From the IMG/VR virus record IMGVR_UViG_3300032240_001991, positions 62,001 through 126,000 of that record: a DNA stretch of 64,000 nt; one strand, 5' to 3'. Position numbers and translations under genes: made by a program. Below, one piece after another: positions 15,898 through 61,244 of this stretch (the first letter of the stretch is position 1; every line of letters begins with the position of its first letter). The notes beneath the pieces are model-generated. The model ran no database searches. It was not told the origin of the DNA and worked only from the letters and a program-made list of their open reading frames with translations.

Positions 15898-16557
15898 TTA
15901 GTACAAAATGCCTGCAGACTGAAAGAAATCATAATCAACTTGATAGTATTCTTTTATTGCAGAGATCTCTTCAGCTGTAGGTGTAGGATCATTGATTAGT
16001 CCGATACTGGCGTTTTCTTTTGTAAAGGTATATGAACTGATATCTAACGAAGCCATTATGTTTGCAATGCTGTTATCAATATCTCTATATGGTAAAAGGG
16101 TGACGTTATCAAAATTACACCAATTTATCTGTGGTTTCATTAAAGGCCAGTAGACACCTGCTGTTTCTGCAAAATTTGTTTTCAAAAAATCTATAATTTT
16201 AATATTTCTCAGCGCAGTTTGTATTTCCGGGGATAACTGATCAAAGGGTGTTCGATCAAGAAAAGACATTTCAATAGAATCTCCATAGAAATAGTGTATC
16301 ATGTCAGGGATACATCCTGGTCTGGTTCTTATGTAATTCCATGTTGATAAAAATCTATCAACCGGATCTCTATGCAGGCAAAACATTTTAATGCCGGGGT
16401 CGGGAAAAAATTTCTGATTAAATTCTTGATAATTTGTATGATTGTGTAGACATTCGTCAAAGAGAACGCCCGTGGATTGTAGACAGGTCACCAGACTGGT
16501 GGTTGCGGTTTTGGGATTTAAAAATATTGCAACGGATTTTTCTGCTGAATAGATCAT
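15898..16557 (-). CDS. Sulfotransferase (Sulfotransfer_2-like)
   Basis: 5'-phosphosulfate loop NPKTATTSL and 3'-phosphate motif RDPVDRFLSTW; PQ..W motif. Confidence 0.85.
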   Translation of the reverse strand: MIYSAEKSVAIFLNPKTATTSLVTCLQSTGVLFDECLHNHTNYQEFNQKFFPDPGIKMFCLHRDPVDRFLSTWNYIRTRPGCIPDMIHYFYGDSIEMSFLDRTPFDQLSPEIQTALRNIKIIDFLKTNFAETAGVYWPLMKPQINWCNFDNVTLLPYRDIDNSIANIMASLDISSYTFTKENASIGLINDPTPTAEEISAIKEYYQVDYDFFQSAGILY

Positions 16558-16787
16558 GATTTTAATTTTTCGATATTTAAATTTTGTGCGGCAATGATGT
16601 CAAAATTGGCGTTTATGAAATCTCTAATTTTCATCCCGTTCAGATCGAGAACAGGAACAACAGAATATTCTTCACTTGTTACTCTCTTGCCCGTATTATA
16701 ATCAACAGTCGATATTCTGAAAACTATATTTTCACTGACACCGGGTATAATTTCGAGCGCATGTTTATAAGCAGGAAATGTGTTCAT
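16554..16787 (-). CDS. Hypothetical protein
   Basis: Coupled between the fibre gene and the sulfotransferase. Confidence 0.65.
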   Translation of the reverse strand: MNTFPAYKHALEIIPGVSENIVFRISTVDYNTGKRVTSEEYSVVPVLDLNGMKIRDFINANFDIIAAQNLNIEKLKS

Positions 16788-16788
16788 G

Positions 16789-18426
16789 TTAGTAATAACT
16801 GATTAAAACAGCTCCATTTTGTCCAGCCGCTCCGGTAACATTTTGATAGGCGCTATATACGGCAGGGAATGAGTTGAAAAGTGGATTGCCAAAATTGGCG
16901 TAGTTACCGGTTATTATGGCGCTGCCCGCCGCTCCGTAAGAGTCACCGAAGAATCCTATTGTTCCGGCGGCAACTCCTGGACAAAAAATACGGGTCGGAG
17001 AGTATCCACCGTCACTAAAACTAAAAAAATAAAATGTAGTAGTAGACCCTGCTCCGGTGATATTCACATCATTGCCTCCAGAAGCCGTTCCCCCAGCAGC
17101 ACCATAATAGTCAGAAGGTCCTGAAGTTGCACTTCCTCCTCTTGCAGTCATAGTAGTGAATGCAAAGCTGGATGTGGAAACTGTGCTGGTTGTTCCGGGT
17201 TTTCCCGGAGTAGGACTGGATGTGCCAGAATCGCCTTGCCCTCCGCCCGCGCCGCCTGCACCCACTGTTATAAAAAGAGTTTTACCAGATAAAGTGCTGA
17301 CATTGTAAACAGATCTACAGTATCCGCCTGCTCCGGATTCTCCTACCCAATAAATCGTGTAGGAGGGATAGTTGCCACCGGTGTCATCTATGACCATCTT
17401 GTGTCCACCTCCCCCTCCCCAGGCTTCTACATACATTAAATTTACACCTGAAGGAATGACATGAGTAAAATTACCCGGTGTGCTATATAATGTACTAGTT
17501 GTAGGTAATCGGCTTATTTCGTCAAAAATACCCGATGTGCTGGCAGATCCGGTATTGGTCAGACGAAAAGCTGTGGAGCTACCGGCATTTGTTACTTCGT
17601 CTAATTCAATGTATCTTATTGCGTCGGTAGCTATTTTGGCCTGAGTCGATGGTGTGGGTTGTGTGTAGGGAGATAAACCTGAATACTGAATTACATTATT
17701 GGCGCAAATCGGTGGCACTGTGTCAGTATTAGGCGGAGTTTTACTCAGCATGGTTAGGTTTGTGACTTTGTTGATAAATCTTTTTGAATAGCTGTCAACG
17801 TTAAGCAACAATACAGTACTGGCAGAGGTGGTTAAACTACTGGTAGGCACGGAAAAGTTACTGGTATAAACTGAGGAAGTAGTTATTCTAAAATCTTTCA
17901 TAAGACCGGTAAACCACCCACCGTATATAGAGAAGTTGTACACATAAGGATAAGTGTTATTAAAAGACAATGCTCCTAATATACCAGGAGAAAGAGTAGC
18001 AGAATCTGTAGTTGTAGAAGCTACAGACACTCCATTTATAAAGAACGTGCTGGTAGTGCCTTTTCTAGTCCATGCTATATGCGACCATTGTTGAACAGCG
18101 ACCGGCCCCAATGAATCAAACACTACAGAGCCGTTGTTAAAGCAAGATATAAACCCGTTACGTAGACTGCACCATCCATTGGTATACCCAGGATTTCCTG
18201 GAGAATTTCGATTTGAAAAAACAGTCATTACACCAAGATTTGTTTGATAAATCCAAGATTCTACAGTAAAATCTCCGCTTAGGTCTATAGGACTATTAAT
18301 ATTACAATAGCTCCTTCCATCAAAAGACAGACTCCCTCCATCAATTATGGAAACTTCATCAAAATAGTTAACCCCATTTGATCTTAAATCGCCGTTATTT
18401 CTTAAACTCCAGGCTGCTAGCGTCAT
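16789..18426 (-). CDS. Virion protein with LamG/concanavalin-like and Gly-rich domains
   Basis: DFTVESWIY...QQWSHIAWTR.G....FING...GLMKDFRIT (LamG); EAWGGGGG...GAGGY..VGAGG..G (Gly-rich domain). Confidence 0.8.
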   Translation of the reverse strand: MTLAAWSLRNNGDLRSNGVNYFDEVSIIDGGSLSFDGRSYCNINSPIDLSGDFTVESWIYQTNLGVMTVFSNRNSPGNPGYTNGWCSLRNGFISCFNNGSVVFDSLGPVAVQQWSHIAWTRKGTTSTFFINGVSVASTTTDSATLSPGILGALSFNNTYPYVYNFSIYGGWFTGLMKDFRITTSSVYTSNFSVPTSSLTTSASTVLLLNVDSYSKRFINKVTNLTMLSKTPPNTDTVPPICANNVIQYSGLSPYTQPTPSTQAKIATDAIRYIELDEVTNAGSSTAFRLTNTGSASTSGIFDEISRLPTTSTLYSTPGNFTHVIPSGVNLMYVEAWGGGGGHKMVIDDTGGNYPSYTIYWVGESGAGGYCRSVYNVSTLSGKTLFITVGAGGAGGGQGDSGTSSPTPGKPGTTSTVSTSSFAFTTMTARGGSATSGPSDYYGAAGGTASGGNDVNITGAGSTTTFYFFSFSDGGYSPTRIFCPGVAAGTIGFFGDSYGAAGSAIITGNYANFGNPLFNSFPAVYSAYQNVTGAAGQNGAVLISYY

Positions 18427-18429
18427 AGT

Positions 18430-20391
18430 TTATCCGAATATGATATCTAAACTGTTAGTAAATGTATTATAAAATTGATATACTGCGCTAACATTAGTGT
18501 TTGAATTAACAAATCCCATTCTTCCAGCTGTGTAGATATTACCACCGACCCCTGCTCCTCCAGCTACCTGCAGAGCGCCGGTATTGGTTGACAGAGAATT
18601 TGTAACGTTGGTAATTGTAAAAATACCAGTATAAGGAGATATCGGGCCACTCGATCCTGAACCGGACGATCCAATGTATCCTGCTGGACCAAGTGGGCCA
18701 AGTGAACCTGATGGGCCAATACCTTGGCTACCAATATAACCTATCGGACCTAGTGGACCTAACGGACCTAGTGGACCTAGATTGCCTTGACTACCAATAT
18801 AACCAATTGGACCCAACGGACCCAACGGACCTAACGGACCCAACGGACCTAACGGACCTAGTGTACCAATACTACCGGCGTATCCTCGAGATCCAGTATA
18901 ACCTGCTGGTCCAGGTTTATCGAAAAATAATGCGTAATTGCGCCCATCAGTAAGATATTCGTTTGGATTGTTAGTGGGCGAAGATAACCAACCACCACCT
19001 AGTGCAATAGTTGTCCCAGTAGTATAAGTTCCATTTGTTGACACAGTATAATAATAACTACTGTACACCAAAGTTGGGTTAGCTTCGTCGATAACATATA
19101 ATATTCCTGGTATAGTACTACTGTATGACAGCAGTGTTTGGCCTACATTTTCACCAAATCTATTATAATCTTTGTTTACATTGATGTTACCAATAATACT
19201 GTTATCATCAAAATCTAAATTAAATTGTCCCGAAGGTGGTGGCGGTAGACCAATACCATTAGTATAGTTCATGCCTTGGAACGTATAGCGTAAACCAGTT
19301 GGCAGCGCGCCCATTGATCCAGTATAACCTGTACTACCAGTATATCCACGCGAACCAATAAAGCCCTGTGGGCCTAATGGGCCAAGTGGCCCGAGATTAC
19401 CAAAACTACCTATGTATCCTATAGGGCCTTGAGGACCTAGTGGGCCAAGTGGACCTAAATTGCCTTGACTACCTACGTAGCCTATAGGACCTTGTGGACC
19501 CTGTGGGCCTTGAGGACCTAGTGGGCCTAACGGACCTAAGTTACCTTGACTGCCTACGTAACCTATTGGACCTTGTGGACCTATTGGGCCTTGTGGACCA
19601 AGTGGACCTAACGGACCTAAATTGCCTTGACTACCTACGTAGCCTATAGGACCTTGTGGACCTATCGGGCCTTGAGGACCTAACGGACCTAACGGACCTA
19701 AGTTACCTTGACTACCTACGTAGCCTATCGGGCCCTGAGGACCTAGTGGACCAAGTGGACCTAAGTTACCTTGACTACCTGCGTAACCTATTGGACCTTG
19801 TGGACCTTGTGGACCTATCGGGCCTTGTGGACCAAGTGGACCTAACGGACCTAAGTTACCTTGACTACCTACGTAGCCTATCGGGCCCTGAGGACCTAGT
19901 GGACCAAGTGGACCTAAGTTACCTTGACTACCTGCGTAACCTATTGGGCCCTGCGGACCCAAAGGACCTAATGGACCTAAGTTGCCTTGACTACCCGCAT
20001 AACCAATTGGGCCCTGCGAACCTTGAAGCCCTCGGCTACCTACATAACCAATTGATCCAGTGTACCCGCCGCCGCCCCCTCCTCCGCCAGCACTGCCGGT
20101 ATATCCGTATCCTACTTCGATTCCATTAACTATTAATGTTCCGCTGAGATTCGTAACAGTTCCCAAAACTTGTAAATTTTGTTTAATCAATACGTTGGAA
20201 TTAAATGTGCTAGAATTAATAACCACTAACGATGGGGTAGTAAACACTCCCATCGAATCCAACGTAGCATTATAAGACCCATTAATTAATTGACTGACTG
20301 GGATATTATTAGGATCCCACTTGACGCCGTCAAAAATATATCCTGCATACGTTGTACCAGTTGAGGGATTAGTTGGAAAATTTAATGCCAT
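18430..20391 (-). CDS. Collagen-like (Gly-X-Y) fibre protein
   Basis: Two long G-X-Y tracts ([21 protein letters not shown] units); N-terminal [12 protein letters not shown]...YIFDGVKW module. Confidence 0.9.
19360..20045 (-). repeat. Coding tandem repeats of collagen units
   Basis: Degenerate 9-nt GGACCTAAC/GGACCTTGT units and longer repeats such as GGACCTAAGTTACCTTGACTACCTACGTAGCCTAT; differences fall mainly at third codon positions. Confidence 0.9.
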
Positions 20392-20406: not shown

Positions 20407-21990
20407 TTACAACGCTTCGATATAATTCATTGTCGCCCAAATTTCGGCATCGACACCGCCGCCAGAAATTTGTTTAACTATTAAAACAATTTTATCTGCA
20501 TCAGTATATGCAATATTAGATCCTAAATTTAAAAAGTTTAAAGATGTGCGTACATCAAAAGATGCGCCTGAATTAAAAAGTCCACCTATCAATTCTATGC
20601 CACCCGTCCAAGTAGTACTAGGTGTATAATCCCATTGTCTGGTAGTTTTTCCTATATTGGTTGGAACAACATCATTGGTTAATATTGTAGGATTGAGTAA
20701 TAATCTCCATAAAAAGGTAGCAGGATTGGCATTTTTTCCTTGATTAGCAGCATCGGTTATATCAATAGCTTGTACTTGTAGATCTGCTCTCTGGTAGGGT
20801 TCGCCGGCTCTTAATCCTACTCCTAAAATTGCATATTCGTTGGTTCCTCCTGCCGAATAAACAGTAGTGGATGTAGTTCTAGCTAAACCAAACGAAGGAT
20901 TTAATTCCACTTCTGCTTCAGTATTAATACAAGTTTCTGACCAAGTCATAGTAGGTAGATAAGAAACTACTCCAGTATTAGTCATTTCGAAACGATCAGG
21001 CACAGAAGGCGCATTGGCCCAGTGAGTTCCTAATTGTCCGGTATAGTCAATCATGTGGCAGACTTGATTACCATGCCCAACGTTTATACCAAACCGTATT
21101 CTATTAGTTCGAGATCCAGCAAAGTCTAACCACCAAACATATTTCATGTGTAGACCAGTTTGTGTGGCTATTCCGGTTCCATGCCCAGCAGTATAAGATC
21201 CAGGATTCACAGCATAAGTGAGAGTAACAGTATTAGTTGAAGTAGCAGATATCATGGTTATACCATTATACCCGGTATTTCCGTCATTAAAACCAGTAAC
21301 GGTGGCTTTAGTACCAATTCTAAATGGGCAAGTACTAGCAGTATTGTATTTCACATTATATTTGGTTTCGTTGGTAATAGTAGAAATCACTATTGTAGAA
21401 CTACTAACAAATGAGCCTAAAGTAAATGCCACAGCAGAACCAGTGGTTAAATTTATATTGCTAGGGCCTGTTCCATCTAATCGATCATAGGTCCAAGAAG
21501 ATCTAGGATACCGATCCTCTACTAAAGTTCCGTCAATTAAACGTCTACGAACAACAAAATATAATTCATTATTAGAAACTTCAAAAAATGTACCATTAAA
21601 AGCTGTAAATAGTCCTCTACGTTTAACAACATTAGCATCATATCCGTTAAATGCTCCTGCTGATTGCCATACCATACTGACGCTAGGACGTAATTTATGT
21701 CTACGTCGGCTAATGCGTATTGCACTACCCGTACTATCAGTTCCGCTGGTAATCAGGATACTAGCAATATTCTGCACAAATGAACTAGTGGAATTAGTTC
21801 CTGTAAAATTTTCAATGTATCGAAGATCACCATCTTTATCAACAATCGGGGCATACCACCATGATTGTGTAGGGGGAGCAACACGTAACCGTCCTAAAGC
21901 ATCTAATTGTGTGTTAATATCGTCTACATATTGTACAAGTTGTGTACCTGTGCTATAAACTTGTTGATTATTATTAAACAAGTACGTCAT
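20407..21990 (-). CDS. Putative virion structural protein
   Basis: DALGRLRVAPP...RISRRRH...YDRLDGTGPS pattern typical of large-phage virion proteins; T/S/G-rich. Confidence 0.65.
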   Translation of the reverse strand: MTYLFNNNQQVYSTGTQLVQYVDDINTQLDALGRLRVAPPTQSWWYAPIVDKDGDLRYIENFTGTNSTSSFVQNIASILITSGTDSTGSAIRISRRRHKLRPSVSMVWQSAGAFNGYDANVVKRRGLFTAFNGTFFEVSNNELYFVVRRRLIDGTLVEDRYPRSSWTYDRLDGTGPSNINLTTGSAVAFTLGSFVSSSTIVISTITNETKYNVKYNTASTCPFRIGTKATVTGFNDGNTGYNGITMISATSTNTVTLTYAVNPGSYTAGHGTGIATQTGLHMKYVWWLDFAGSRTNRIRFGINVGHGNQVCHMIDYTGQLGTHWANAPSVPDRFEMTNTGVVSYLPTMTWSETCINTEAEVELNPSFGLARTTSTTVYSAGGTNEYAILGVGLRAGEPYQRADLQVQAIDITDAANQGKNANPATFLWRLLLNPTILTNDVVPTNIGKTTRQWDYTPSTTWTGGIELIGGLFNSGASFDVRTSLNFLNLGSNIAYTDADKIVLIVKQISGGGVDAEIWATMNYIEAL

Positions 21991-23177
21991 ATTATTCTCC
22001 AGCCATCTCTGTATATCATGTGTAACCCACCGTTATCAACTTCTAAGATGGCGCCCCCTGTGTCGTTATCTATTGTACTATTTAAGGTAATTGGGTTAAC
22101 AGAACAAGCGCCGCTTTCGTCTTTAACAACCATTTCTTGCCCTGGCATACCACTAGGAACAGTTATTGACACAGGCCCTGCATAGTTAACTCCGATATAC
22201 CAATCAGATGATGATGCTGTATATACCGACGAAGTTACTAATACAGTCTGTCGTAATAAAACAGGAGTGGAAGGCCCGCCCGAATTAGCACGCACCCAAG
22301 CATTGGGATAATAGAAAATGTACATTTCCCCATTAACATCATCCCACCATAAGTCTCCATTATTTGGATTACTCGGGGGATTATCTGCTACAGTTACACC
22401 TGGCCCTTTTGATCCGAGGTATCCAGCACTACCGACGTACCCTATCGAACCCTGACTTCCGACGTAACCGGCTCCGCCGCTACCAGTATATCCGGTTCCT
22501 TGAGATCCGAAGTATCCTGCTGGACCTATTAATCCTTGAGATCCGAAGTATCCTGCTGGACCTATTAATCCTTGAGATCCAAAGTATCCTGCTGGACCTA
22601 TTAATCCTTGAGATCCAAAGTATCCTGCTGGACCTATTAATCCTTGAGATCCAAAGTATCCTGCTGGACCCGGTGGACCAGCATATCCTTGCGGCCCTAA
22701 GTTACCTTGACTCCCGATGAATCCGATCGATCCAACATATCCTTGCGGCCCTAAGTTACCTTGACTCCCGATGAATCCGATCGATCCAACATATCCAAAA
22801 CCTGAAGATCCTGTGTATCCACTTATACCATCAGCACCTGAAGATCCTGTGTATCCACCACTTGGCCCTGGGTCTCCTTTACTCCCAACATACCCTATAG
22901 AGCCGGTATACCCTCCGCCTATTCCTCCGGTATTGGTAATAGTTACAACTCCCGTTGAAGTATCAACAGAAATTCCCGCACCGGCAATAATGGCTGTAAC
23001 TCCGCCGCTTGTCGAGGTGCTAGCCCCGCCGACAATTATACCTCCCGGAGTAAAGCCGTCGCTAACTCTAATGGTATTGGTAATAGGATCATACCAAAGA
23101 CGGCCTACTTCCCCTATTCGGGTAGTGCCATCACCATAATTCCGTCTACTGGTAAAAAAATCCTGTGTATAGGCCAC
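21987..23177 (-). CDS. Collagen-like virion protein
   Basis: GYxGS-containing G-X-Y tract; PPSNPNNGDLWWDD module; AAGGAG RBS, GTG start. Confidence 0.85.
   Translation of the reverse strand: MAYTQDFFTSRRNYGDGTTRIGEVGRLWYDPITNTIRVSDGFTPGGIIVGGASTSTSGGVTAIIAGAGISVDTSTGVVTITNTGGIGGGYTGSIGYVGSKGDPGPSGGYTGSSGADGISGYTGSSGFGYVGSIGFIGSQGNLGPQGYVGSIGFIGSQGNLGPQGYAGPPGPAGYFGSQGLIGPAGYFGSQGLIGPAGYFGSQGLIGPAGYFGSQGLIGPAGYFGSQGTGYTGSGGAGYVGSQGSIGYVGSAGYLGSKGPGVTVADNPPSNPNNGDLWWDDVNGEMYIFYYPNAWVRANSGGPSTPVLLRQTVLVTSSVYTASSSDWYIGVNYAGPVSITVPSGMPGQEMVVKDESGACSVNPITLNSTIDNDTGGAILEVDNGGLHMIYRDGWRII
22497..22790 (-). repeat. Coding tandem repeats (36-nt x about 4.8 and 54-nt x 2)
   Basis: TCCTTGAGATCC(G/A)AAGTATCCTGCTGGACCTATTAA units encode LIGPAGYFGSQG; the 54-nt duplication encodes [18 protein letters not shown]. 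Confidence 0.9.
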
Positions 23178-23187: not shown

Positions 23188-23400
23188 TTAGCCATCTAAT
23201 GGATCATCGTCGTCTGCTGCTAATAGATCTGCGTTTTTTTGCGGCACATCAGCCATTTTTTTCATAATTTCTATTTTAGTCTGTAAAGGAGGAACGAAGA
23301 CGTCTTTCTCTAAAGGACCTTTATCTTCTGGCTCGGGCTCTTTGCCATCAAGCGCATCGATTATATCTGCAATGCTTCTCATAAACTCTGCCGCCCTCAT
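23188..23400 (-). CDS. Acidic hypothetical protein (start refined to MRAAEF)
   Basis: AGGAG RBS before ATG 23400; TATAAATA upstream; FVPPLQ.K.E..KK motif. Confidence 0.75.
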   Translation of the reverse strand: MRAAEFMRSIADIIDALDGKEPEPEDKGPLEKDVFVPPLQTKIEIMKKMADVPQKNADLLAADDDDPLDG

Positions 23401-23530
23401 GCCATACGCTCCTGTGATTTTTCCTACTATAGTATATTTATAAAAATATTTCCTGTATTTAGCTAGTTGACTACAACAGGGCTTTACTATAATATACCTA
23501 TATAAAGGTAAAAATTTTGAAAGGAAGGTT

Positions 23531-23759: not shown

Positions 23760-24527
23760 TTAACAAGGCGCTGCTCCAAATATCTTTTGTGAAGCTAGAC
23801 TCTTTTCTGGAGGATCTAGGATAGTCCATTCTGATCCTAATACAGGAGTAAGATGTATATGACTACGAGGAATCCAATATTTGTCGACTTTTATATCTAA
23901 TTGATCAACAATATTACTAAAGATACTGTCTAACAAAATAACAGCTTGGGCGCCTTCTATGATGCCCAACCAGTCAAATACATTATCTGTAATACCTTCA
24001 GTAATTTCAATATGTTGCCAATCACTAGGTATAGCGGTTAAGTCAGGAGTTACTGAAAAAGAGCTACCCTTAGTATGGGTTACAAAATAATTCTCCTGCT
24101 TGACTAATCGATCAAACAATGCCTGTTCTTTTTTATGATTACGATTAATGCAGTCGTTTAAGCGCCATTTGTATAGAAACGGAACGCCTGCTTTGGTGTA
24201 CTTAAATTCATCAAATTTTTGTATTTGAAACCAAGGAACTTGACTTAACTCAGGAACCACATTAAGGCTCTGATATAAACAGATAATTTCTTCACATTTT
24301 GCAGACTGTAACCGCCTTGTTGGTTCATTATAAAAGAATTCGCCACGTGCGTCTGTGGGAATACTGATCCATTTAACCCACGGAGCGGTATCTTTAAAAC
24401 TAGGATAAAATTCCTCGCAAATGGGCCAATGGATTTCGTAATCACGCTGATGATAGTAGTGAGCAATTGGTAGGGCTAGACATATGTCGCCTAGCCCTCT
24501 GCTCTGTATAATGCCTATTTTCTTCAT
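23760..24527 (-). CDS. GT9/heptosyltransferase-like glycosyltransferase
   Basis: N-terminal IIQSRGLGDICLALP; C-terminal IEGAQAVILLDS. Confidence 0.7.
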   Translation of the reverse strand: MKKIGIIQSRGLGDICLALPIAHYYHQRDYEIHWPICEEFYPSFKDTAPWVKWISIPTDARGEFFYNEPTRRLQSAKCEEIICLYQSLNVVPELSQVPWFQIQKFDEFKYTKAGVPFLYKWRLNDCINRNHKKEQALFDRLVKQENYFVTHTKGSSFSVTPDLTAIPSDWQHIEITEGITDNVFDWLGIIEGAQAVILLDSIFSNIVDQLDIKVDKYWIPRSHIHLTPVLGSEWTILDPPEKSLASQKIFGAAPC

Positions 24528-24528: not shown

Positions 24529-25305
24529 TTAAAAATAATTCATGCCCTGTTGTTGTGGAAAGTAACATTCATTTCGCTCGATCGGCAAATCTCGACGCCC
24601 TTCGCACCAAATATCAGAGTGCCCTAACCCAATAGCTAATGAAAGTCCTACGCTTTGGTTGCCAATGAATACATTAGCCCCGTCAATATATTGCGCCATT
24701 TCAAGCAGGCTATTGACTGGCTGATAAGGAATATCCCATCCGATTACACGCTTAAACTCTTCGTATTCGTTCTTGAGCCCAATGAAGAAAGCACGGTTAT
24801 CAATTCCTTGATCTTTCCAATCTTTCCAAACTGCACTCAACTGCGGTGGAACCCACCGTGTCGTACGATTAATAGCAACGTCCCTGCCTTCTACTATCAA
24901 GGACTTTGGCACAGTAATCCAAGGAGTCTGCCTCAATTGCTTATGGGCTTCCACATCCATAATTCCAAAAGCAACAGCATAAACATCGACATAGTTTCCT
25001 GGATGCTTAACAAACAAGGGACGAAATTTGTCTAGATTATGGGTAATCTCTGTAGTTCTAGGATCCATGGGCGCAAATTTAGTGATGTAATCTTGTGCAT
25101 CCATGAAGCTCTTCATAAAATCGTAGTCTCTAGTGTTCATGCGTCCTGCATGAAAAGGAGGAGCAGGAACTCCATAAAACGTTTTACTAAGAACGTCAAT
25201 TTGATTCATATGCAGGTAAAAATCTCCCCCGCCAAAATGTTTTACAATTGGTAGACTGTAAATCAAATCTCCCAATGTTCCTGAATGTTTAAATGTTTTA
25301 GTCAC
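24529..25305 (-). CDS. GT9-like glycosyltransferase
   Basis: HSGTLGDLIYSLP and LLEMAQYIDGANVFIGNQSVGLSLA motifs. Confidence 0.7.
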   Translation of the reverse strand: MTKTFKHSGTLGDLIYSLPIVKHFGGGDFYLHMNQIDVLSKTFYGVPAPPFHAGRMNTRDYDFMKSFMDAQDYITKFAPMDPRTTEITHNLDKFRPLFVKHPGNYVDVYAVAFGIMDVEAHKQLRQTPWITVPKSLIVEGRDVAINRTTRWVPPQLSAVWKDWKDQGIDNRAFFIGLKNEYEEFKRVIGWDIPYQPVNSLLEMAQYIDGANVFIGNQSVGLSLAIGLGHSDIWCEGRRDLPIERNECYFPQQQGMNYF

Positions 25306-29758: not shown

Positions 29759-32725
29759 ATGACCATACTCTATATCAATACGGGGACATCAGCGAACGCA
29801 GGAAACGGTGATGTTTTAAGAACGGCATTTTGGAAAGTAAATCTTAATTTTTCTGAAATTCAATCAATTCTTAACGGCGGTGGTGGAAATGGCAGCATTA
29901 TACAGAGTTCTACTCCTCCGGTTACAACATCAACTAGTACACTTTGGTATGATACAGTAGGTGGTCGTAGCTATGTTTACTACGATCAAACTTGGGTAGA
30001 TGCGAGTCCTACTGCCGATCCTGTAGATTTATCAGCCGTACACACTGATATAGTTCCTATTACAGATAACACTTATAGCTTAGGATCGCCTTCTAATCAG
30101 TGGAAGCACATATTTGTATCTACCGGGTCAATTTACTTAGGTGATGTTAAACTGAGTACAGACAATGGACAGTTACAGATACAAACTGTAAATTATTCTT
30201 ATAATACAAGTACCGGTCAAATTACAACAGAAACAGTGACCTCTGCATATGCAGCACCAACAACAGTACCAAGTTTTACAGTAACAGATACTCTGCAAGT
30301 AGGCACTATTGTATTTTCTTCCGACGGTAGTTCTCAAACTACGGCAGGAGGTGCAGGAACGCTATCTATCAAACCAGATATAGTTAGTTACGGTGTTGGT
30401 ACATATTATAGCCCATCCAACCTAGGATTTACGGTAGTTAATAATCTTAATGAAGATGACATGGTACATACAATTTCACTGCCGTTTACTATGAACTTTC
30501 TTGGTAATACCTGTACCGAAGTAAAGTTAGTATCTAACAGTTATATTACATTTGGACCTACTGTTATAGAACCTTATTATTTTACACTAGGTCCAGGTAA
30601 ACCCAACGTTCCTGCAATATTTGTAGGCGCACGTGATAATAGCTTACAAAAATACTATTACGGTACAGCAACTGGTACTAACGTATTTGTTATAGGCTAT
30701 GCAGGAAGTGCAGACACTGGAGGTAGCACAACTACCCAAACTGTTTTATGGGAAGCACAATTTTCATATGTTGACGGAGTTGCTGATACCGTTTCAATTA
30801 CTATGGGAGACACTAGCCCAAATTTCCCCGGTGGTGTATGGGGCGTAAGCAACGGAGCTGAATGGGTAGATATGATTAATCCTCTACCTTGGTACGGTGT
30901 TGTAGGAGGAGAAGGAGATTTCTACCGTACTGCAACAGTTAGTCCGGGTGCAAATATTAACAACGGTACTGTTGCGTTTACTGGTCCGGGTGTAAACATT
31001 ATTAATAGCAGTAGTGTTACCTATATCAATATTAATCCTTTTGACAATATAATTTCTTTAGGCCTAGATAACGACAACAGCCAAAGTGTTATTAGTAGTG
31101 TATATTACGGATTGAAGCTCACTACAGCAGAGGAAGGCAACGCCATAGATATTTCTCCTCTGGGGAATTTAAATCTACATGCAGGTAATAAATCTTTAAA
31201 CCAACCAGGTAACGGCTTTAATACAAACATCAATGGCGGCGATGGTGTTGCATCTGATACAACTGACTATAACGGGGGTAGTGTATACCTTCGTGGCGGT
31301 AATGCTGCCAACGCAGGAACTCCGGGCTCAGTAGTAGTAACATCTAATAGCAAGAATTGGGAATTTCACCCTTCGGGAAGTTTACATCTTTCTACTTCAA
31401 CATTTACAGGCGCACAAGAGTCTGATACATTTGTTGTGCCTACATTAGCACTAGGAACCAACGACAAGAGTGTTGGCATTACTAATGCAGTATCTACAAA
31501 TGCTAATCGCGGCGGCTATGCTATAGTGATCCAAGGGCAGCGCGGCTTTGGAGACTGGGGCACTACAGGGTGGGGCGGCGACGGATCAAGCATTTTAATC
31601 AATGCAGGTGTAGGCGGAGAGTCGTCTACCAATGATCAAGGCGGTGAAGGTGGTAATATTGAAATCCATGGTGGAGTAGGACAAAATGGACGAGATGGCG
31701 GTGACCTTAATCTAATTGCTGGCAATGCTAGATGGAGTGGCGGAACTAACAATGTAACTGGTGGACATGTATGGCTCACTGCAGGTAGCGCATTGTCAGG
31801 AGAAGGTGTAGCTGCAAATAAAGGTTATGGTGGAGATATTCGCATATATGCGGGTATTGGTAATACAGTTAGCGGAAACATTAACTTCTATACCAGCAAC
31901 AATAACAGTTCACCGAATCTTCAATGGGCACTAACTAGCAATGGCAGTACAGTATATCCAAGTGGATTAGCCGTAGTACCTATTTCAGTATTTTATCCAG
32001 GAGCACCATTTAGCGGCACTATAGTTTCTCAAACTACTGGATCAATGTTGCAGATAGTAGCACAAGGTACCGATGGTTCAGCAGCAATTGGTTGGGCAGA
32101 AAACCCTAGCTTAGGGGGAAAAGTAGCAGCTATTAACTTTAACAGTGTTGCTAATAGTGTTAATGTTACTGCAGGTTCGTATACCGGTACGTTATATTAT
32201 TGGACGTTCCAAGATAACGGCATAACTGCTATTCCGGGAGAAATTAGTTCTGCCGCTGGTACTGGTAATGTTGTAATTAATGCTAGCAACGGTACAACAA
32301 GCACGTGGACATTTGGCGGAGACGGCAATTTAACATTACCTATAGGCGGTGGTATTAAGTCAACAACTAATCATTATTCCAGCACCGCTAGTGGAACAAT
32401 AATCAACGCTACTGTGATTAGTACTGGTAGTTCAAAAGTATTCTTAGAACCCGGATCCGGTATAAGTGCTTCTTATCAAATAGGCGATGGTCTCTACGAC
32501 GGACAAGAAATAAAGTTTTACCCGTCATTAGTAGCTGGAATATCACAGTTTGATGTACAGAGCATTTACGTTTTTGTATCTAAGATATATAACATAGGCA
32601 CAACAAGTACCTCTCTACCTTGGTATCCATTTGGCACCTATTTTAACGGCGCAACAACAACTCCGTCTCTTACATGGGATGGAGTAAATCAGTGCTGGAT
32701 ATTAAATCCGTGGAACTGGGATTAA
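29759..32725 (+). CDS. Large tail-fibre/virion structural protein
   Basis: INTGTSANAGNGDVLRTAF.KVN.NF baseplate/fibre N-terminus; TYSLGSP..QWK; G/T/N-rich repeats; TAAATA upstream. Confidence 0.8.
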   Translation: MTILYINTGTSANAGNGDVLRTAFWKVNLNFSEIQSILNGGGGNGSIIQSSTPPVTTSTSTLWYDTVGGRSYVYYDQTWVDASPTADPVDLSAVHTDIVPITDNTYSLGSPSNQWKHIFVSTGSIYLGDVKLSTDNGQLQIQTVNYSYNTSTGQITTETVTSAYAAPTTVPSFTVTDTLQVGTIVFSSDGSSQTTAGGAGTLSIKPDIVSYGVGTYYSPSNLGFTVVNNLNEDDMVHTISLPFTMNFLGNTCTEVKLVSNSYITFGPTVIEPYYFTLGPGKPNVPAIFVGARDNSLQKYYYGTATGTNVFVIGYAGSADTGGSTTTQTVLWEAQFSYVDGVADTVSITMGDTSPNFPGGVWGVSNGAEWVDMINPLPWYGVVGGEGDFYRTATVSPGANINNGTVAFTGPGVNIINSSSVTYININPFDNIISLGLDNDNSQSVISSVYYGLKLTTAEEGNAIDISPLGNLNLHAGNKSLNQPGNGFNTNINGGDGVASDTTDYNGGSVYLRGGNAANAGTPGSVVVTSNSKNWEFHPSGSLHLSTSTFTGAQESDTFVVPTLALGTNDKSVGITNAVSTNANRGGYAIVIQGQRGFGDWGTTGWGGDGSSILINAGVGGESSTNDQGGEGGNIEIHGGVGQNGRDGGDLNLIAGNARWSGGTNNVTGGHVWLTAGSALSGEGVAANKGYGGDIRIYAGIGNTVSGNINFYTSNNNSSPNLQWALTSNGSTVYPSGLAVVPISVFYPGAPFSGTIVSQTTGSMLQIVAQGTDGSAAIGWAENPSLGGKVAAINFNSVANSVNVTAGSYTGTLYYWTFQDNGITAIPGEISSAAGTGNVVINASNGTTSTWTFGGDGNLTLPIGGGIKSTTNHYSSTASGTIINATVISTGSSKVFLEPGSGISASYQIGDGLYDGQEIKFYPSLVAGISQFDVQSIYVFVSKIYNIGTTSTSLPWYPFGTYFNGATTTPSLTWDGVNQCWILNPWNWD

Positions 32726-32728
32726 TCT

Positions 32729-49621: not shown

Positions 49622-49980
49622 GATTATATGAAGTTGCAGATAGTTTTGTTGACGACTTAGAAACATTACTAAGAAATCTTGTAGGTCGTGGCGACAGTAA
49701 GCATAGCTCCCAACAGTTAACCTATCCAGCACTTAGTAATCTTTTACAAAATATTGGGTACAGCGGAATTAATCAAGACGTACTTCAGAAAGTTTATGAT
49801 GATAACCCAGAATTACAAAATTTAATTGCAAATTTTGATGATCAAGGCATTACGTTAGGTACAAAGGTACAACCAGACCAGCCAGAAAAAACACAGTTTG
49901 ATATTCCATCTGGCGGTAAAAGTGTAGATAGAATGGCTAGTAATGCAGCTAAAGATTATATTAGTAAGAGAAGCAAATAA
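49618..49980 (+). CDS. Conserved phage hypothetical protein
   Basis: MRLYE...V..MA..AAK; 4-bp overlap. Confidence 0.75.
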   Translation: MRLYEVADSFVDDLETLLRNLVGRGDSKHSSQQLTYPALSNLLQNIGYSGINQDVLQKVYDDNPELQNLIANFDDQGITLGTKVQPDQPEKTQFDIPSGGKSVDRMASNAAKDYISKRSK

Positions 49981-50016
49981 TTTACATCGGCTGATATTTT
50001 TGTTATAATTAAGTTT

Positions 50017-59625: not shown

Positions 59626-60258
59626 ATGAGAGAAATAATGAAAATTAAAGATAAATTGTATCCTAATGGTTCACCATACGAAAATGCAGAAATTTTACCG
59701 TACGATACACAGCATTTTCTTAATTATCCAACAGCATTAGTGCAAGGTATACAAACTATTCTTCCAAAAAGAATTATAGAAGTTGGATCATGGAAAGGTC
59801 ACTCTGCTAACTACATGGCAAAAGTTTGCCTACAATATACAGACAATTTTGAAATTGTTTGTATTGATACTTTTCTAGGTTCTGCTGAACATTATACACA
59901 TCCTGATCACTCAAAGGGATTACCTAGAAAAAATAATCTTACTAACCTGTTAAGTACTTTTCTTTCTAATACTATTCAAGAAAATAATACCAAATATATT
60001 ACTCCATTCCCTGTTGATTCAAATACTGGATTTCTTGTATTAAAAGAATGGGGATACCTTGCAGATTTAATCTACATTGACGGATCGCATGATTATAGAT
60101 CGGTCACTATTGACATTATGAACTACAGACAACTTGTAAGACGAGGAGGGGTTATGATCTTTGACGATTACCTGCATCCTCCTACAGGATATGCAATTGA
60201 CGATAATCTTAGCGGCGGTCAGGTGATTGACGGAAAATACTTTTGGGTTAATAACTAG
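59626..60258 (+). CDS. Class I SAM methyltransferase (Methyltransf_24-like)
   Basis: IIEVGSWKGHS, VCIDTF.GS, LIYIDGSH.Y, GGVMIFDDY. Confidence 0.88.
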   Translation: MREIMKIKDKLYPNGSPYENAEILPYDTQHFLNYPTALVQGIQTILPKRIIEVGSWKGHSANYMAKVCLQYTDNFEIVCIDTFLGSAEHYTHPDHSKGLPRKNNLTNLLSTFLSNTIQENNTKYITPFPVDSNTGFLVLKEWGYLADLIYIDGSHDYRSVTIDIMNYRQLVRRGGVMIFDDYLHPPTGYAIDDNLSGGQVIDGKYFWVNN

Positions 60259-60260
60259 TT

Positions 60261-60452
60261 TTATTTCTTTTTACCAGACTTCATATTAGCACACCAATGC
60301 GCCATTCTGCGTTTTTCGCCTGTGCTATTTTTAGCAACGCTGCGCAGTTTGCTTACACTCTGCTTGCAATTGACACCTGAACGTTTGGCTAGTCCTTTGC
60401 GACCCGGCTTTTTGCCATCAGCAAAGTTTTCTAGTAACTCATTTATACGCAT
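60261..60452 (-). CDS. Small basic protein with a capsid-targeting-like N-terminus
   Basis: MRINELLE then a K/R-rich module; TAAATA 4 nt before ATG 60452. Confidence 0.8.
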   Translation of the reverse strand: MRINELLENFADGKKPGRKGLAKRSGVNCKQSVSKLRSVAKNSTGEKRRMAHWCANMKSGKKK

Positions 60453-60485
60453 CACGTATTTATGATTGAATAAATTAAGTACACT

Positions 60486-61244
60486 ATGCCTAAAATATTT
60501 GATAGATTGTATTATGTAGGTCCTCTTGGGTTGGGCGACAGTTTTTTACATAACGGAATTGTACATCACTTTGCTAGTCAATGTTTTGAATTACATGTTC
60601 CTGCTTGGCCACAGATACACAAAACCGTTGCTTGCCTTTATCAAGATTTTCCAAATATTAAAGTTGTTCCGCTTAGACATTACGACGAAGGTGAAAATCA
60701 ATATATCGCAGAACAAAAGCTTTCTCGAATTTTACCTAACGATATGATTCGAATTAATAGTTCTACCGGAGAACCAATGGCGCCTCTTTGGGATGTGCAA
60801 GTCTATGCATATTATGGATTATCGTTTTCTTTAAGGTACAATAATTTTCATTTACCAAAACACGTAGAAGGCGCAGAAGAACTTTATCAAGATTTGTCTA
60901 AAGGAGAGCCTTACATCTTAGTTCACAAAAGATCTTCTAAGTATCCAACTGGATTTCCTATTGATATTAATAACTTTAGAAAGAATGCTGGATTACCAAC
61001 ATTAAAAGTTGTTGAAGTGCAAGAAGGCATTACAGATAATATGATGCAGTATGTTAAACTTATTGAAAATGCAGAGGAAATCCATTGTGTTGCCAGCAGC
61101 TTCCATTGTTTAGTAGACAGCATATATAATAGAACTAAAGGACGATTATTTTTCCATGACATACGAGCAGATGCTCTAATGAAAATTAATTCTCATGATA
61201 ACCAATTTAGTTGGCAAATAGTTGATTACGGTGTTAAACTATAA
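60486..61244 (+). CDS. Glycosyltransferase-like protein (GT9-like fold)
   Basis: LGLGDSFLHNGIV; LIENAEEIHCVASSF. Confidence 0.6.
   Translation: MPKIFDRLYYVGPLGLGDSFLHNGIVHHFASQCFELHVPAWPQIHKTVACLYQDFPNIKVVPLRHYDEGENQYIAEQKLSRILPNDMIRINSSTGEPMAPLWDVQVYAYYGLSFSLRYNNFHLPKHVEGAEELYQDLSKGEPYILVHKRSSKYPTGFPIDINNFRKNAGLPTLKVVEVQEGITDNMMQYVKLIENAEEIHCVASSFHCLVDSIYNRTKGRLFFHDIRADALMKINSHDNQFSWQIVDYGVKL

What the first reader, a model, noticed from the sequence alone, without database searches (positions are those of the whole stretch)
15898..61244. Candidate virion-glycan decoration system interleaved with collagen and fibre genes
Seen: at least five glycosyltransferase-type genes (12486, 23760, 24529, 38380, 60486), three or four SAM methyltransferases (42443, 43054, 59626, possibly 34042), a sulfotransferase (15898) in the same operon as the fibre genes, and a QueC-like ATPase. 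Most are near late promoters and next to Ser/Thr/Tyr-rich fibres with GYxGS repeats. Known: glycosylated virions exist in some mycobacteriophages and in chloroviruses and mimiviruses. Inference: the phage builds methylated or sulfated glycans on fibres or capsid. An alternative is remodelling of host LPS for superinfection exclusion, since GT9 enzymes act on LPS core.
Basis: partly seen in the sequence, partly recalled or inferred. Interest (0 to 1): 0.62.

Follow-up and report, generated by a model that had tools for sequence, protein, structure and literature searches.

The report
Phage glycan-building genes beside fibre genes
A 327-kb T4-like jumbo phage carries a real and unusually large set of sugar-adding, sugar-methylating and sulfate-adding enzymes placed among its collagen-like tail-fibre genes; it most likely coats its own fibres with modified sugars, but no glycan has been observed.

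Summary
The observation mostly holds. The window is part of a 326,658-bp T4-like jumbo phage contig.

**Confirmed enzymes**
- 38380-42441 is a 1353-aa, four-module glycosyltransferase (GT4-GT4-GT2-GT-A).
- 42443 and 59626 are TylF/CmcI-type sugar O-methyltransferases.
- 12486 has a GT-A fold by AF2 and is one of six paralogues in the contig.
- 23760 and 60486 belong to a Pfam-less family with a compact GT-B fold closest to GT9.
- 24529 is GT9-like at lead level only.
- 15898 is a divergent Sulfotransfer_2 relative with its PAPS-binding motifs kept.
- 43054 is a methyltransferase at motif level only.

**Not confirmed**
- 34042 has no support as a methyltransferase.
- The QueC-like gene is real but shows no link to glycans.

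**Context**
- The GYxGS collagen-like fibres are real (19 and 15 repeats).
- The sulfotransferase sits in the late fibre operon, and three relatives keep that position.
- In relatives, the GT9-like gene and the giant GT lie next to fibre-like genes, whose identity changes from genome to genome.
- Many relatives fuse the giant GT to an FkbM methyltransferase.
- None of the enzymes has a predicted membrane helix.

**Verdict:** the best reading is cytoplasmic glycosylation of virion fibres, with methylation and probably sulfation (confidence about 0.45). Remodelling of the host envelope remains a serious rival. I rate it a new variant of a known kind.

The parts
12486..13202 (-). FamA: GT-A-fold glycosyltransferase-like protein (DUF7796-type), one of six paralogues in the contig. 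NATAAATA motif at -26.
   Evidence: AF2 pLDDT 92.5. Foldseek GT6 E 1e-7. VIA Mnn9 Z 13.5. Paralogues. Relatives carry PF25072. Promoter motif.
15317..15883 (-). 188-aa Gly/Ser/Thr-rich protein, the last gene of the fibre operon. Relatives have an S74-type fibre gene at this position.
   Evidence: Composition. Synteny. No family hit.
15898..16557 (-). Divergent Sulfotransfer_2-like enzyme embedded in the fibre module.
   Evidence: PKTxTTS and RDPxxRxxS motifs are invariant. 41 of 74 extended-family members hit PF03567. Position conserved in L018, L019 and L020.
16554..16787 (-). Conserved 77-aa protein whose stop overlaps the sulfotransferase start; function unknown.
   Evidence: Orthologues at 46-49% identity in the same position in L018-L020.
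16789..18426 (-). Fibre protein with Laminin_G_3 and a glycine-rich domain.
   Evidence: Pfam. PHROG baseplate/tail-fibre families. Orthologues at 40% identity next to the sulfotransferase.
18430..20391 (-). Collagen-like tail fibre with 19 GYxGS motifs.
   Evidence: Pfam Collagen E 7e-39. PHROG tail-fibre families. Motif count. Sequence.
20407..21990 (-). Virion structural protein (phrog_1645).
21987..23177 (-). Collagen-like tail fibre with 15 GYxGS motifs.
23188..23442 (-). T4-type late promoter TATAAATA (23435-23442), a Shine-Dalgarno site and a small acidic ORF (about 23188-23400) that head the fibre operon.
23760..24527 (-). FamC/F: compact GT-B glycosyltransferase-like protein, closest to GT9, with an invariant Gly13-Asp14.
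   Evidence: 55 orthologous loci.
24529..25305 (-). FamD: probable GT9-like protein, paired with FamC in 16 of the 55 related loci listed. A sigma-70-like box lies upstream.
29759..33475 (+). 988-aa Ser/Thr/Tyr-rich fibre-like protein (late motif at -34) followed by a 248-aa Laminin_G_3 protein. These are candidate acceptor proteins.
   Evidence: A relative of the 988-aa protein lies directly upstream of the giant GT in L076.
38380..42441 (+). Giant four-module glycosyltransferase: GT4 (residues about 1-440), GT4 (about 450-880, an internal duplicate at 43% identity), GT2 (about 885-1130) and a GT-A/Anp1-like domain (1157-1353).
   Evidence: Full-length orthologues in 33 loci.
42443..43054 (+). 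Methyltransf_24 (TylF-type) sugar O-methyltransferase.
   Evidence: No orthologue in the relatives' loci.
43054..43701 (+). FamE: probable class-I SAM methyltransferase, at motif level only.
   Evidence: Paralogue next to MT24 and FamA genes at G000 47959-50109. Orthologues beside the giant GT in L079, L080, L082 and L083.
59626..60258 (+). Methyltransf_24 / CmcI / TylF-type O-methyltransferase.
   Evidence: Pfam E 1.6e-15.
60486..61244 (+). FamC/F paralogue (GT9-like GT-B family).
   Evidence: The homologue in cyanophage S-SRM01 lies inside a glycan gene cluster.

Best explanation
The window holds part of a phage-encoded, cytoplasmic glycan-assembly toolkit. Its most likely acceptors are the phage's own fibre proteins.

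Shown here:
- The phage is T4-like and jumbo-sized.
- It encodes soluble glycosyltransferases of four fold types or families (GT4, GT2, DUF7796-type GT-A, compact GT9-like GT-B).
- It encodes TylF/CmcI-type sugar O-methyltransferases and a divergent Sulfotransfer_2-type enzyme.
- Elsewhere on the contig it encodes genes for nucleotide-sugar synthesis and tailoring.

Inferred:
- Late in infection the giant four-module GT and its changeable tailoring partners build a short methylated oligosaccharide. Here the partners are MT24 plus FamE; one relative has a FamA GT-A gene in that position, and others have a fused FkbM methyltransferase.
- The GT9-like enzymes add sugars to Ser/Thr/Tyr-rich or collagen-like (GYxGS) fibre proteins. 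Bacterial autotransporter heptosyltransferases do something similar on repetitive adhesins.
- The sulfotransferase inside the fibre module adds sulfate from host PAPS to the fibre glycan, or possibly to the fibre protein itself.
- The decorated fibres would then differ in adhesion, stability or recognition.
For: Enzyme identities.

Sulfotransferase context:
- It lies in the fibre operon headed by TATAAATA.
- Three relatives at 52-54% identity keep the order LamG fibre, 75-aa protein, sulfotransferase, next fibre. One of them continues into T4 gp13/14/15, terminase and sheath genes.

GT9-like gene context:
- Across 40 unique orthologous loci, 26 of 228 close neighbours are fibre-like against 15 of 694 more distant genes (odds ratio 5.8, p 9e-8).
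- Some of those neighbours match virion structural or tail-fibre PHROGs.

Giant GT context:
- Full-length orthologues exist in 33 loci, and their neighbours are different fibre-like genes in different genomes.
- Many relatives fuse it to an FkbM methyltransferase.

Other support:
- NATAAATA late-type motifs precede 12486, 29759, 38380 and the fibre operon.
- No flagged enzyme has a predicted membrane helix, and the contig has no polytopic transporter-like or Wzy-like protein.
- The contig holds about 20 further glycan genes, including NDP-sugar enzymes.
- A pattern-limited scan of 185,579 species genomes found no cellular homologue of the GT9-like family. The Atlas places the FamD and FamA neighbour clusters at 94-100% viral.

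Precedents:
- PBCV-1 A064R (GT-GT-MT) with A061L, and mimivirus L230 acting on collagen-like proteins (PMC9614988).
- TibC heptosylates repetitive autotransporters (PMC4358343).
- Mycobacteriophage capsid and tail-tube glycans (cited in PMC12619734).
- The collagen-like glycoprotein BclA with a methylated terminal sugar (PMC6222408).
Against: - No glycan or glycoprotein has been observed; all evidence on the target is gene neighbourhood and timing motifs.
- The FamD-FamC pair has a sigma-70-like promoter here rather than a late one. In some relatives, such as L017, it is not next to fibres.
- The related loci are not independent, so the enrichment p-value is optimistic. 'Fibre-like' was also defined by composition alone.
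- 59626 and 60486 sit among metabolic genes (peroxiredoxin, RNR), not fibre genes.
- GT9 enzymes classically act on the LPS core, and soluble GTs can work on lipid-linked intermediates supplied by the host.
- The sulfotransferase itself does not reach the Pfam threshold. It could be a fibre assembly factor that only keeps the fold.
- No PAPS-synthesis gene was found.
- The late-type motif at 38380 lies only 15 nt from the start codon, and a TATAAT box lies just upstream, so the timing of that operon is ambiguous.
Confidence: 0.45

Rival explanations
1. Host envelope remodelling. The enzymes alter host LPS, capsule or other surface polysaccharide during infection, using host lipid carriers and export machinery. 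The purpose would be to block superinfection or to stop progeny phage adsorbing to cell debris.
For: - The closest structural neighbours of FamC/F are LPS-core heptosyltransferases.
- The FamD-FamC pair has a sigma-70-like, early-type promoter.
- The large cluster outside the window resembles O-antigen or capsule sugar-pathway clusters: DegT aminotransferase, epimerases, NTP-transferases, a C-methyltransferase.
- In S-SRM01 the family sits among fucosyltransferase, GT25 and GDP-fucose genes of the kind found in LPS/O-antigen clusters.
- Peripheral GTs need no membrane helix, so the absence of predicted helices does not argue against this.
Against: - The contig has no initiating polyprenyl-phosphate transferase, flippase, polymerase or ligase candidate; no ORF has 8 or more predicted membrane helices.
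- The sulfotransferase is locked inside the late fibre module in all relatives examined.
- Late-type motifs precede the giant GT and FamA.
- Fibre-like neighbours are enriched.
- The families look virus-restricted rather than recently taken from host LPS loci.
Confidence: 0.27
2. DNA hypermodification. The GTs and methyltransferases decorate modified bases in phage DNA with sugars to evade restriction. The QueC-like enzyme would contribute a deazaguanine-type modification.
For: - T4-like phages glycosylate hydroxymethylcytosine, and virus GTs can build diverse glycans on DNA (Pyle et al. 2024, cited in PMC12619734; PMC13326640, listed).
- A QueC-like PP-loop ATPase is present.
Against: - The only thymidylate-synthase-family gene has the dUMP-type PFNIAS motif. 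That marks it as a true thymidylate synthase, not a dCMP hydroxymethylase (the motif reading is my own knowledge).
- The contig has no TGT/DpdA.
- The enzyme set is typical of glycoconjugate assembly: four-module GT4/GT2, a GT9-like family, sugar O- and C-methyltransferases, a sulfotransferase.
- The placement in fibre modules would be left unexplained.
- The contig may be incomplete, so absences are weak evidence.
Confidence: 0.08
3. A mixed or other role. Some enzymes serve the virion, such as the fibre-module sulfotransferase and the giant GT. Others (59626, 60486, the FamA paralogues, the outside cluster) make a separate product: a free or cell-associated polysaccharide, a small-molecule glycoside, or a capsid-surface fibril layer as in mimivirus.
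For: - The genes are scattered over at least six sites on the contig with different promoter types.
- 59626 and 60486 lie among metabolic genes.
- FamA copies and a canonical Sulfotransfer_2 are interleaved with tRNA genes.
- An unusual RuBisCO-like gene and a TPP enzyme sit in the outside cluster.
Against: No positive evidence points to any particular second product. It is simpler to assume one glycan system with many tailoring steps.
Confidence: 0.2

Closest known systems
Chlorovirus PBCV-1 A064R plus A061L (virus-encoded multi-domain GT-GT-methyltransferase that builds capsid-protein glycans)
   Same: Both are soluble, virus-encoded, multi-module transferases with a methyltransferase. Relatives here fuse an FkbM domain to the giant GT; in this window a TylF-type methyltransferase and a probable second one follow as separate genes. 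That mirrors A064R-D3 plus A061L (PMC9614988). In both cases synthesis is independent of host secretory glycosylation.
   Different: No sequence relationship was shown. Here there are four GT modules (GT4, GT4, GT2, GT-A) in a bacteriophage. The acceptor is unknown and is more likely fibres than the major capsid protein. Sulfation is an added feature.
Bacterial autotransporter heptosyltransferases (TibC/AAH) and LPS heptosyltransferases WaaC/WaaF (CAZy GT9)
   Same: FamC/F has a GT-B fold whose best structural matches are GT9 members: 3tov Z 13.6, TibC 12.7, WaaC 12.4, WaaF 12.1. It has an invariant N-terminal Gly-Asp at the position of the WaaC catalytic Asp (the residue assignment is my own knowledge). 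TibC modifies Ser residues in repetitive adhesins (PMC4358343), and the repetitive GYxGS fibres here could be modified in the same way.
   Different: There is no match to Pfam PF01075. The proteins are about 250 aa rather than 320-400 aa. There is no sign of TibC's dodecamer or iron-binding insert. The contig has no GmhA-type heptose pathway gene, so the donor sugar is unknown.
Mycobacteriophage virion glycosylation (Freeman et al. 2023, as cited in PMC12619734)
   Same: Phage-encoded GTs placed beside structural genes glycosylate virion proteins in the cytoplasm.
   Different: Those phages have one or two GTs acting on the C-termini of capsid and tail-tube subunits. Here about 20 or more glycan genes are present, including nucleotide-sugar tailoring, methylation and sulfation, and the likely targets are fibres.
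Collagen-like glycoproteins: Bacillus anthracis BclA and mimivirus collagen-like proteins with L230
   Same: Collagen-type Gly-X-Y filaments on a particle surface are encoded near, or act together with, dedicated glycosyltransferases. The BclA glycan ends in a 2-O-methylated sugar (PMC6222408), and L230 glucosylates viral collagen-like proteins (PMC9614988).
   Different: No lysyl hydroxylase or homologue of the BclA rhamnosyltransferases was found. The repeats are GY(V/A)GSQ-type with few Thr or Lys residues. Glycosylation has not been shown.
Glycan gene cluster of freshwater cyanophage S-SRM01 (Kyanoviridae)
   Same: It carries a FamC/F homologue at 31% identity, annotated as hypothetical. 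That gene sits among GDP-fucose synthesis, SIS-domain, NDP-sugar synthase, fucosyltransferase, GT2, FkbM and GT25 genes.
   Different: It is a different phage lineage with a different cluster composition. The paper describing that genome does not discuss a function for the cluster (PMC8557907).

Membership tests
CAZy GT9 / Pfam PF01075 (for 23760-24527, 60486-61244, 24529-25305) | Sequence match to the family model above its threshold | tested here: not met
   No Pfam, NCBIfam or PHROG GT9 hit even at E up to 10. PDB profile search found nothing.
CAZy GT9 / Pfam PF01075 | GT-B two-Rossmann fold with GT9 members as the nearest structures | tested here: met
   For 23760-24527, GT9 entries give Z 12.1-13.6, above all other GT-B families at 10.7 or less; Foldseek E 1e-5 to 1e-3. 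For 24529-25305 the evidence is lead level only: Atlas 0.95 to a PF01075 cluster and two short collinear hhalign matches.
CAZy GT9 / Pfam PF01075 | Conserved N-terminal catalytic Asp (WaaC Asp13 position) | tested here: met
   G13 and D14 are invariant in 56 family members. Equating this with WaaC Asp13 rests on my own knowledge and the structural superposition range, not on a residue-level alignment.
CAZy GT9 / Pfam PF01075 | Uses ADP- or GDP-heptose as donor | not testable with these tools
   The contig has no GmhA (SIS_2) gene. In S-SRM01 a SIS-domain gene and an NDP-sugar synthase gene lie in the same cluster as the homologue, three genes upstream.
Pfam Sulfotransfer_2 (PF03567) (for 15898-16557) | Match above the gathering threshold | tested here: not met
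   11.6 bits against a cut-off of 22; Sulfotransfer_1 13.8 against 22.
Pfam Sulfotransfer_2 (PF03567) | Homology to recognised members through intermediate sequences | tested here: met
   A profile of the close family finds 204 cluster representatives. 41 of the 74 scanned match PF03567, best E 4.8e-10. The deeper profile ranks PDB sulfotransferases first, but weakly, at E 0.02-0.3.
Pfam Sulfotransfer_2 (PF03567) | PAPS-binding motifs (5'-PSB PKxGxT(S/T) and 3'-PB RxPxxRxxS) | tested here: met
   In the 7 close homologues P15, K16, T17, T19 and S21 are invariant. In all 74 sequences R63, P65 and S71 are invariant and R68 is nearly so. Naming these as the PAPS motifs is my own knowledge.
GT-A glycosyltransferases / DUF7796 (PF25072) (for 12486-13202) | GT-A nucleotide-sugar-binding fold | tested here: met
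   The top matches are glycosyltransferases (Mnn9 Z 13.5, ColGalT1 12.3, WrtF 12.3, GT6); nucleotidyltransferases of the same fold appear only lower, at Z 9.3-9.9. Foldseek E 1e-7.
GT-A glycosyltransferases / DUF7796 (PF25072) | DxD-type metal and nucleotide-sugar binding motif | tested here: inconclusive
   The near-invariant block YDLVIRxRPD (D127, R131, R133, D135) lies where a DxD motif would be expected, but it is not a canonical DxD. The protein itself has no PF25072 hit, though relatives do.
GT4 and GT2 (for 38380-42441) | Pfam Glycos_transf_1 / Glyco_trans_1_4 and Glycos_transf_2 above threshold | tested here: met
   78.2, 66.0 and 65.7 bits against cut-offs of 27, 26.4 and 23.3. There are two separate GT4 modules.
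TylF/CmcI-type O-methyltransferases (Methyltransf_24) | Pfam PF13578 above threshold | tested here: met
   42443-43054 scores 28.5 against 26.3, plus TylF 23.6 against 23. 59626-60258 scores 58.3 against 26.3. 43054-43701 does not meet any methyltransferase threshold. 34042-34635 has no hit at all.
Virus-encoded virion glycosylation systems (chlorovirus, mimivirus, mycobacteriophage type) | A glycan is demonstrated on a virion protein and depends on the viral enzymes | not testable with these tools
   Only genomic context is available.
Phage 7-deazaguanine DNA modification (QueC with DpdA) | QueC accompanied by a TGT/DpdA-type transglycosylase | tested here: not met
   QueC PF06508 scores 25.4 against 22, but the contig has no TGT-family match. 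The contig may be incomplete.

The most novel reading that the evidence does not exclude
A lineage of T4-like jumbo phages sulfates its own tail fibres. A dedicated PAPS-dependent sulfotransferase, fixed inside the fibre gene module, would add sulfate to a phage-built methylated glycan on collagen-like or LamG fibres, or directly to the repeated Tyr/Ser residues. This would be the first sulfated bacteriophage virion. It would also be a bacterial-virus counterpart of giant-virus self-glycosylation, with a four- to five-domain assembly-line transferase and two virus-restricted GT families (compact GT9-like, and DUF7796 GT-A).
Probability: 0.25. Interest if true: 0.8.

Novelty: new variant of a known kind. 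Interest (0 to 1): 0.6.

Why it matters
- Self-glycosylation of virions by virus-encoded enzymes is established for giant viruses of algae and amoebae and for some mycobacteriophages. It has not been established for T4-like phages of aquatic bacteria.
- If these fibres carry methylated, sulfated glycans, that would change how host recognition, particle stickiness and stability are understood for an abundant group of large environmental phages.
- This work gives a fold-level function to two large virus-restricted protein families that have no Pfam model: the GT9-like family with at least 860 metagenomic relatives, and the DUF7796 family.
- It also identifies a compact multi-module glycan assembly enzyme that could be expressed and assayed.
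- If the rival is right instead, the same genes make up one of the largest host-envelope remodelling kits seen in a phage.

Tried and rejected
- Sequence-only PDB searches with single proteins or shallow profiles gave nothing interpretable: FamC/F, FamA, the sulfotransferase, FamE and 34042.
- The exact T4 late promoter TATAAATA occurs only 3 times in the window against 6 expected by chance. The enriched motif is the looser NATAAATA.
- I suspected that the longer giant-GT ORFs in relatives were fusions with the window's MT24 gene. That was wrong: MT24a has no orthologue there, and the extra domain is FkbM.
- I looked for a phage-encoded heptose pathway (GmhA/SIS_2) to match the GT9-like enzymes and found none.
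- I looked for PAPS synthesis (APS kinase) and found none significant.
- I looked for DpdA/TGT and found none.
- The candidate dCMP hydroxymethylase is a true thymidylate synthase.
- I looked for psbA as a host clue and found none.
- The 2OG oxygenase next to the FamC orthologue in L017 has no homologue in this contig, so a collagen hydroxylase link was dropped.
Narrower ones worked.
- A scan of GTDB genomes for FamC/F found no cellular relative, but the method is pattern-limited.
- Nucleotide searches of the phage and E. coli collections found no close relative.
- Complex prediction, the reads tools and the RNA tools were not used, because no claim here depends on them.

Full report
**What the window is.** The window is bases 62,001-126,000 of a single 326,658-bp viral contig, which IMG/VR classes as linear. 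PHROG and Pfam scans show a tailed phage: collagen-like tail fibres, baseplate/fibre proteins, DNA ligase, class I RNR, exonuclease, an HNH endonuclease and two GH19 lysins. A relative that carries the same fibre module continues into T4 gp13, gp14, gp15, terminase and sheath genes, so the lineage is T4-like. Related contigs reach 328-355 kb. No close relative exists among deposited phage genomes at the nucleotide level.

**Checking the enzyme calls**
- *38380-42441, giant GT.* This 1353-aa protein has two GT4 modules, a GT2 module and a C-terminal GT-A/Anp1-like domain. The two GT4 modules are 43% identical duplicates of each other. The C-terminal domain has a paralogue elsewhere on the contig and homologues in cyanophages.
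- *42443 and 59626.* Both pass the Pfam thresholds for Methyltransf_24, with TylF/CmcI/rhamnosyl-O-methyltransferase as secondary hits.
- *The other claimed enzymes.* None had a Pfam, NCBIfam or informative PHROG hit, so I tested them in other ways, as follows.
- *12486-13202, FamA.*
 - It has five paralogues on the contig and about 100 metagenomic relatives, a few carrying DUF7796.
 - Its AF2 model (pLDDT 92.5) has a GT-A fold. The best matches are Mnn9 (Z 13.5), ColGalT1, WrtF, hyaluronan synthases and GT6 enzymes.
 - The Atlas finds structurally similar domains fused to Sulfotransfer_2 or to a PRK-type kinase in other phages.
- *23760-24527 and 60486-61244, FamC/F.*
 - They are paralogues, with a third copy outside the window.
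 - The family has at least 860 metagenomic relatives, none with a Pfam domain.
 - The AF2 model (pLDDT 85) is a compact GT-B fold. GT9 proteins rank first: 3tov Z 13.6, the plant PnsB1 GT9-like subunit 13.2, TibC 12.7, WaaC 12.4, WaaF 12.1. All other GT-B families score 10.7 or less.
 - Gly13-Asp14 is invariant across 56 members.
- *24529-25305, FamD.*
 - It has one paralogue.
 - Its nearest Pfam-bearing cluster in the Atlas is GT9, at 0.95.
 - It shares two short collinear profile matches with FamC/F, one at the N-terminal GD motif and one in the C-terminal region.
 - This is lead-level evidence only.
- *15898-16557, sulfotransferase-like.*
 - It carries PKTATTS and RDPVDRFLS motifs.
 - A full-database profile search found 204 cluster representatives. 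Of 74 scanned, 41 match Sulfotransfer_2, best E 4.8e-10.
 - R63, P65 and S71 are invariant.
 - I accept it as a divergent Sulfotransfer_2 relative. It does not itself reach the Pfam threshold.
- *43054-43701, FamE.* Methyltransferase hits are sub-threshold. hhalign matches cover only the DIGA motif I and the LE(D/H)IxxP motif. It is probable but not shown.
- *34042-34635.* It gave no hit in any search, so the 'possible methyltransferase' call is unsupported.
- *QueC-like gene.* It is real. The contig lacks TGT/DpdA, and nothing ties this gene to glycans.

**Checking the context claims**
- The two collagen-like proteins carry 19 and 15 GYxGS motifs inside GPIGY(V/A)[15 protein letters not shown]-type repeats.
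- The minus-strand genes from 23400 down to 15317 are packed with overlaps or gaps of 3-15 nt. They are preceded by a canonical TATAAATA, a Shine-Dalgarno site and a small acidic ORF. The sulfotransferase is therefore in the fibre operon.
- Across the contig, NATAAATA is the most enriched upstream 8-mer family and occurs before 69 of 400 genes.
 - It precedes 12486, 15317, 29759, 38380, 43714, 47850 and 50813.
 - It does not precede 24529, which has a TTGACT-18-TAACAT box, nor 59626 or 60486.
 - At 38380 the motif is only 15 nt from the ATG and a TATAAT box lies just upstream, so the timing of that operon is uncertain.

**Evidence from relatives**
- *Sulfotransferase.* Three independent contigs at 52-54% identity keep the order collagen/fibre, LamG fibre (40% identity), 75-aa protein, sulfotransferase, next fibre.
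- *FamC orthologues.*
 - 55 IMG/VR loci were found, 40 of them unique. In 16 of the 55 listed, a FamD orthologue lies immediately upstream or within two genes.
 - Genes within three positions are fibre-like in 26 of 228 cases, against 15 of 694 for more distant genes in the same loci (odds ratio 5.8, p 9e-8). The contig-wide rate is 19 of 400 (p 0.003). 'Fibre-like' means large and Ser/Thr/Tyr-rich, or Gly-rich.
 - Some of these neighbours match virion structural or tail-fibre PHROGs.
 - The loci are related to one another and the definition is compositional, so this is supportive rather than decisive.
 - In L017 the pair lies beside a 2OG oxygenase and metabolic genes instead.
- *Giant GT.*
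 - Full-length orthologues at 58-74% identity occur in 33 loci.
 - Their neighbours are different fibre-like genes in different genomes.
 - Many carry an extra C-terminal FkbM methyltransferase domain (Pfam E 1e-15).
 - The position downstream of the GT varies. It holds MT24 plus FamE here and a FamA GT-A gene in the 328-kb relative, while other relatives carry the fused FkbM domain with FamE on the opposite strand.
 - This GT-methyltransferase fusion is the best evidence that the product is a methylated glycan.
- *Cultured relative.* In cyanophage S-SRM01 a FamC/F homologue lies inside a cluster of GDP-fucose synthesis, SIS-domain, NDP-sugar synthase, fucosyltransferase, GT2, FkbM and GT25 genes.

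**The wider toolkit**
- The contig has further copies of every family, five Methyltransf_24 genes, a canonical Sulfotransfer_2, three epimerase/dehydratase genes and three nucleotidyltransferase-domain genes.
- Two adjacent operons at G000 144-173 kb encode:
 - a sugar C-methyltransferase;
 - a DegT aminotransferase;
 - a TPP enzyme;
 - an aldolase;
 - kinase-nucleotidyltransferase and HAD-nucleotidyltransferase fusions;
 - GT2 and GT4 genes;
 - FamD and FamA copies.
- None of the flagged enzymes has a predicted membrane helix. No ORF on the contig looks like a polytopic flippase, polymerase or initiating transferase, by a crude hydropathy scan.

**Interpretation**
- I take it as secure that these genes build and tailor glycans, by methylation and probably by sulfation.
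- The acceptor is inferred. I favour virion fibres at about 0.45, for these reasons:
 - the fibre-module position of the sulfotransferase is conserved;
 - the giant GT and FamC keep fibre-gene neighbours even as those genes change;
 - late-type motifs precede several of the genes;
 - the enzymes are soluble and no export genes are present;
 - the families appear virus-restricted.
- Precedents also fit: PBCV-1 A064R/A061L and mimivirus L230 (PMC9614988), TibC (PMC4358343), mycobacteriophage virion glycans (cited in PMC12619734) and the collagen-like glycoprotein BclA (PMC6222408).
- Host-envelope remodelling stays a serious rival at about 0.27. GT9 enzymes classically act on the LPS core, FamD and FamC have an early-type promoter, and the outside cluster looks like an O-antigen sugar pathway.
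- DNA glycosylation is unlikely at about 0.08. The thymidylate synthase is a true one and there is no DpdA. The contig may be incomplete, however.
- A mixed role for different subsets of the genes is plausible, at about 0.2.

**Novelty.** Virus-encoded glycosylation is known, so this is a new variant rather than a new kind. Four things are new:
- the four- to five-domain GT/methyltransferase in phages;
- a sulfotransferase fixed in a tail-fibre module (a full-text search found no paper with the phrases 'phage sulfotransferase' or 'viral sulfotransferase');
- fold-level assignment of two large families that have no Pfam model;
- the scale of the toolkit.

Noticed in passing
window 1-12000: GC content is about 50% here against about 39% in the rest of the window. 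The stretch is an array of some 24 small minus-strand genes. Most have their own TTGAC-N15-20-TAnnnT box 53-72 nt upstream, which looks like an early-gene block of different composition.
   Followed up: partly
L003:10049-11242 (G000:170049-171242): A 397-aa ORF matches the RuBisCO large-chain catalytic domain (Pfam E 1.4e-35). It sits between a 242-aa ORF of unknown function and MT24/FamA genes in a glycan operon. A RuBisCO-like protein is unusual in a phage.
   Followed up: no
L009 and L003 (G000:143969-165353, minus strand): A 22-kb operon of sugar-pathway genes. It includes a Methyltransf_23 plus sugar C-methyltransferase domain protein, a TPP enzyme, a DegT aminotransferase, an HMGL/DmpG aldolase, a GatZ-like protein, a HAD plus nucleotidyltransferase fusion, a nucleotidyltransferase plus APH-kinase fusion, two epimerases, an MT24 and GT4/GT2-like genes. 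This points to an unusual branched or amino sugar.
   Followed up: partly
L003, L010, L004 (G000 about 174-201 kb): 28 tRNA genes are interleaved with FamA GT-A paralogues and a canonical Sulfotransfer_2 gene at G000:193584-194288.
   Followed up: no
window 33470-34635 (-): A QueC-like PP-loop ATPase is preceded on the same strand by a 197-aa protein with no detectable relatives in any library. The contig has no TGT/DpdA, so the role of the pair is open.
   Followed up: partly
window 37402-38016 (-) and 43714-45024 (+): There are two GH19 lysin genes. The second has a 280-aa N-terminal region of unknown function, and its homologue lies downstream of the giant GT in most relatives with enough flank (9 of the 12 examined), directly adjacent in five of them.
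   Followed up: partly
window 50813-52489 (+): A 558-aa Ser/Thr/Tyr-rich protein with a pectate-lyase-like beta-helix domain and a late-type motif. It is likely a tailspike or depolymerase, which would imply a host with a capsule or exopolysaccharide.
   Followed up: no
window 38380-41019: The first two GT4 modules of the giant GT are an internal tandem duplication (residues 2-455 against 450-897, about 43% identity). Relatives keep the duplication.
   Followed up: partly
L005 and L017 (related metagenomic contigs): Relatives encode ribosomal protein S21, an IF1/eIF-1a-like protein, ClpX- and ClpS-like proteins, HSP20, superoxide dismutase and AdoMet decarboxylase near the GT9-like genes.
   Followed up: no
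G000 whole contig: CheckV estimates 36% completeness, although the longest related contigs are 328-355 kb, close to this contig's 327 kb. A 4396-aa ORF lies at G000:265215-278405.
   Followed up: no
window 62873-63928 (+): A NadR-like cytidylyltransferase plus NUDIX fusion, probably for NAD salvage, lies next to a peroxiredoxin gene at 61261-61812.
   Followed up: no
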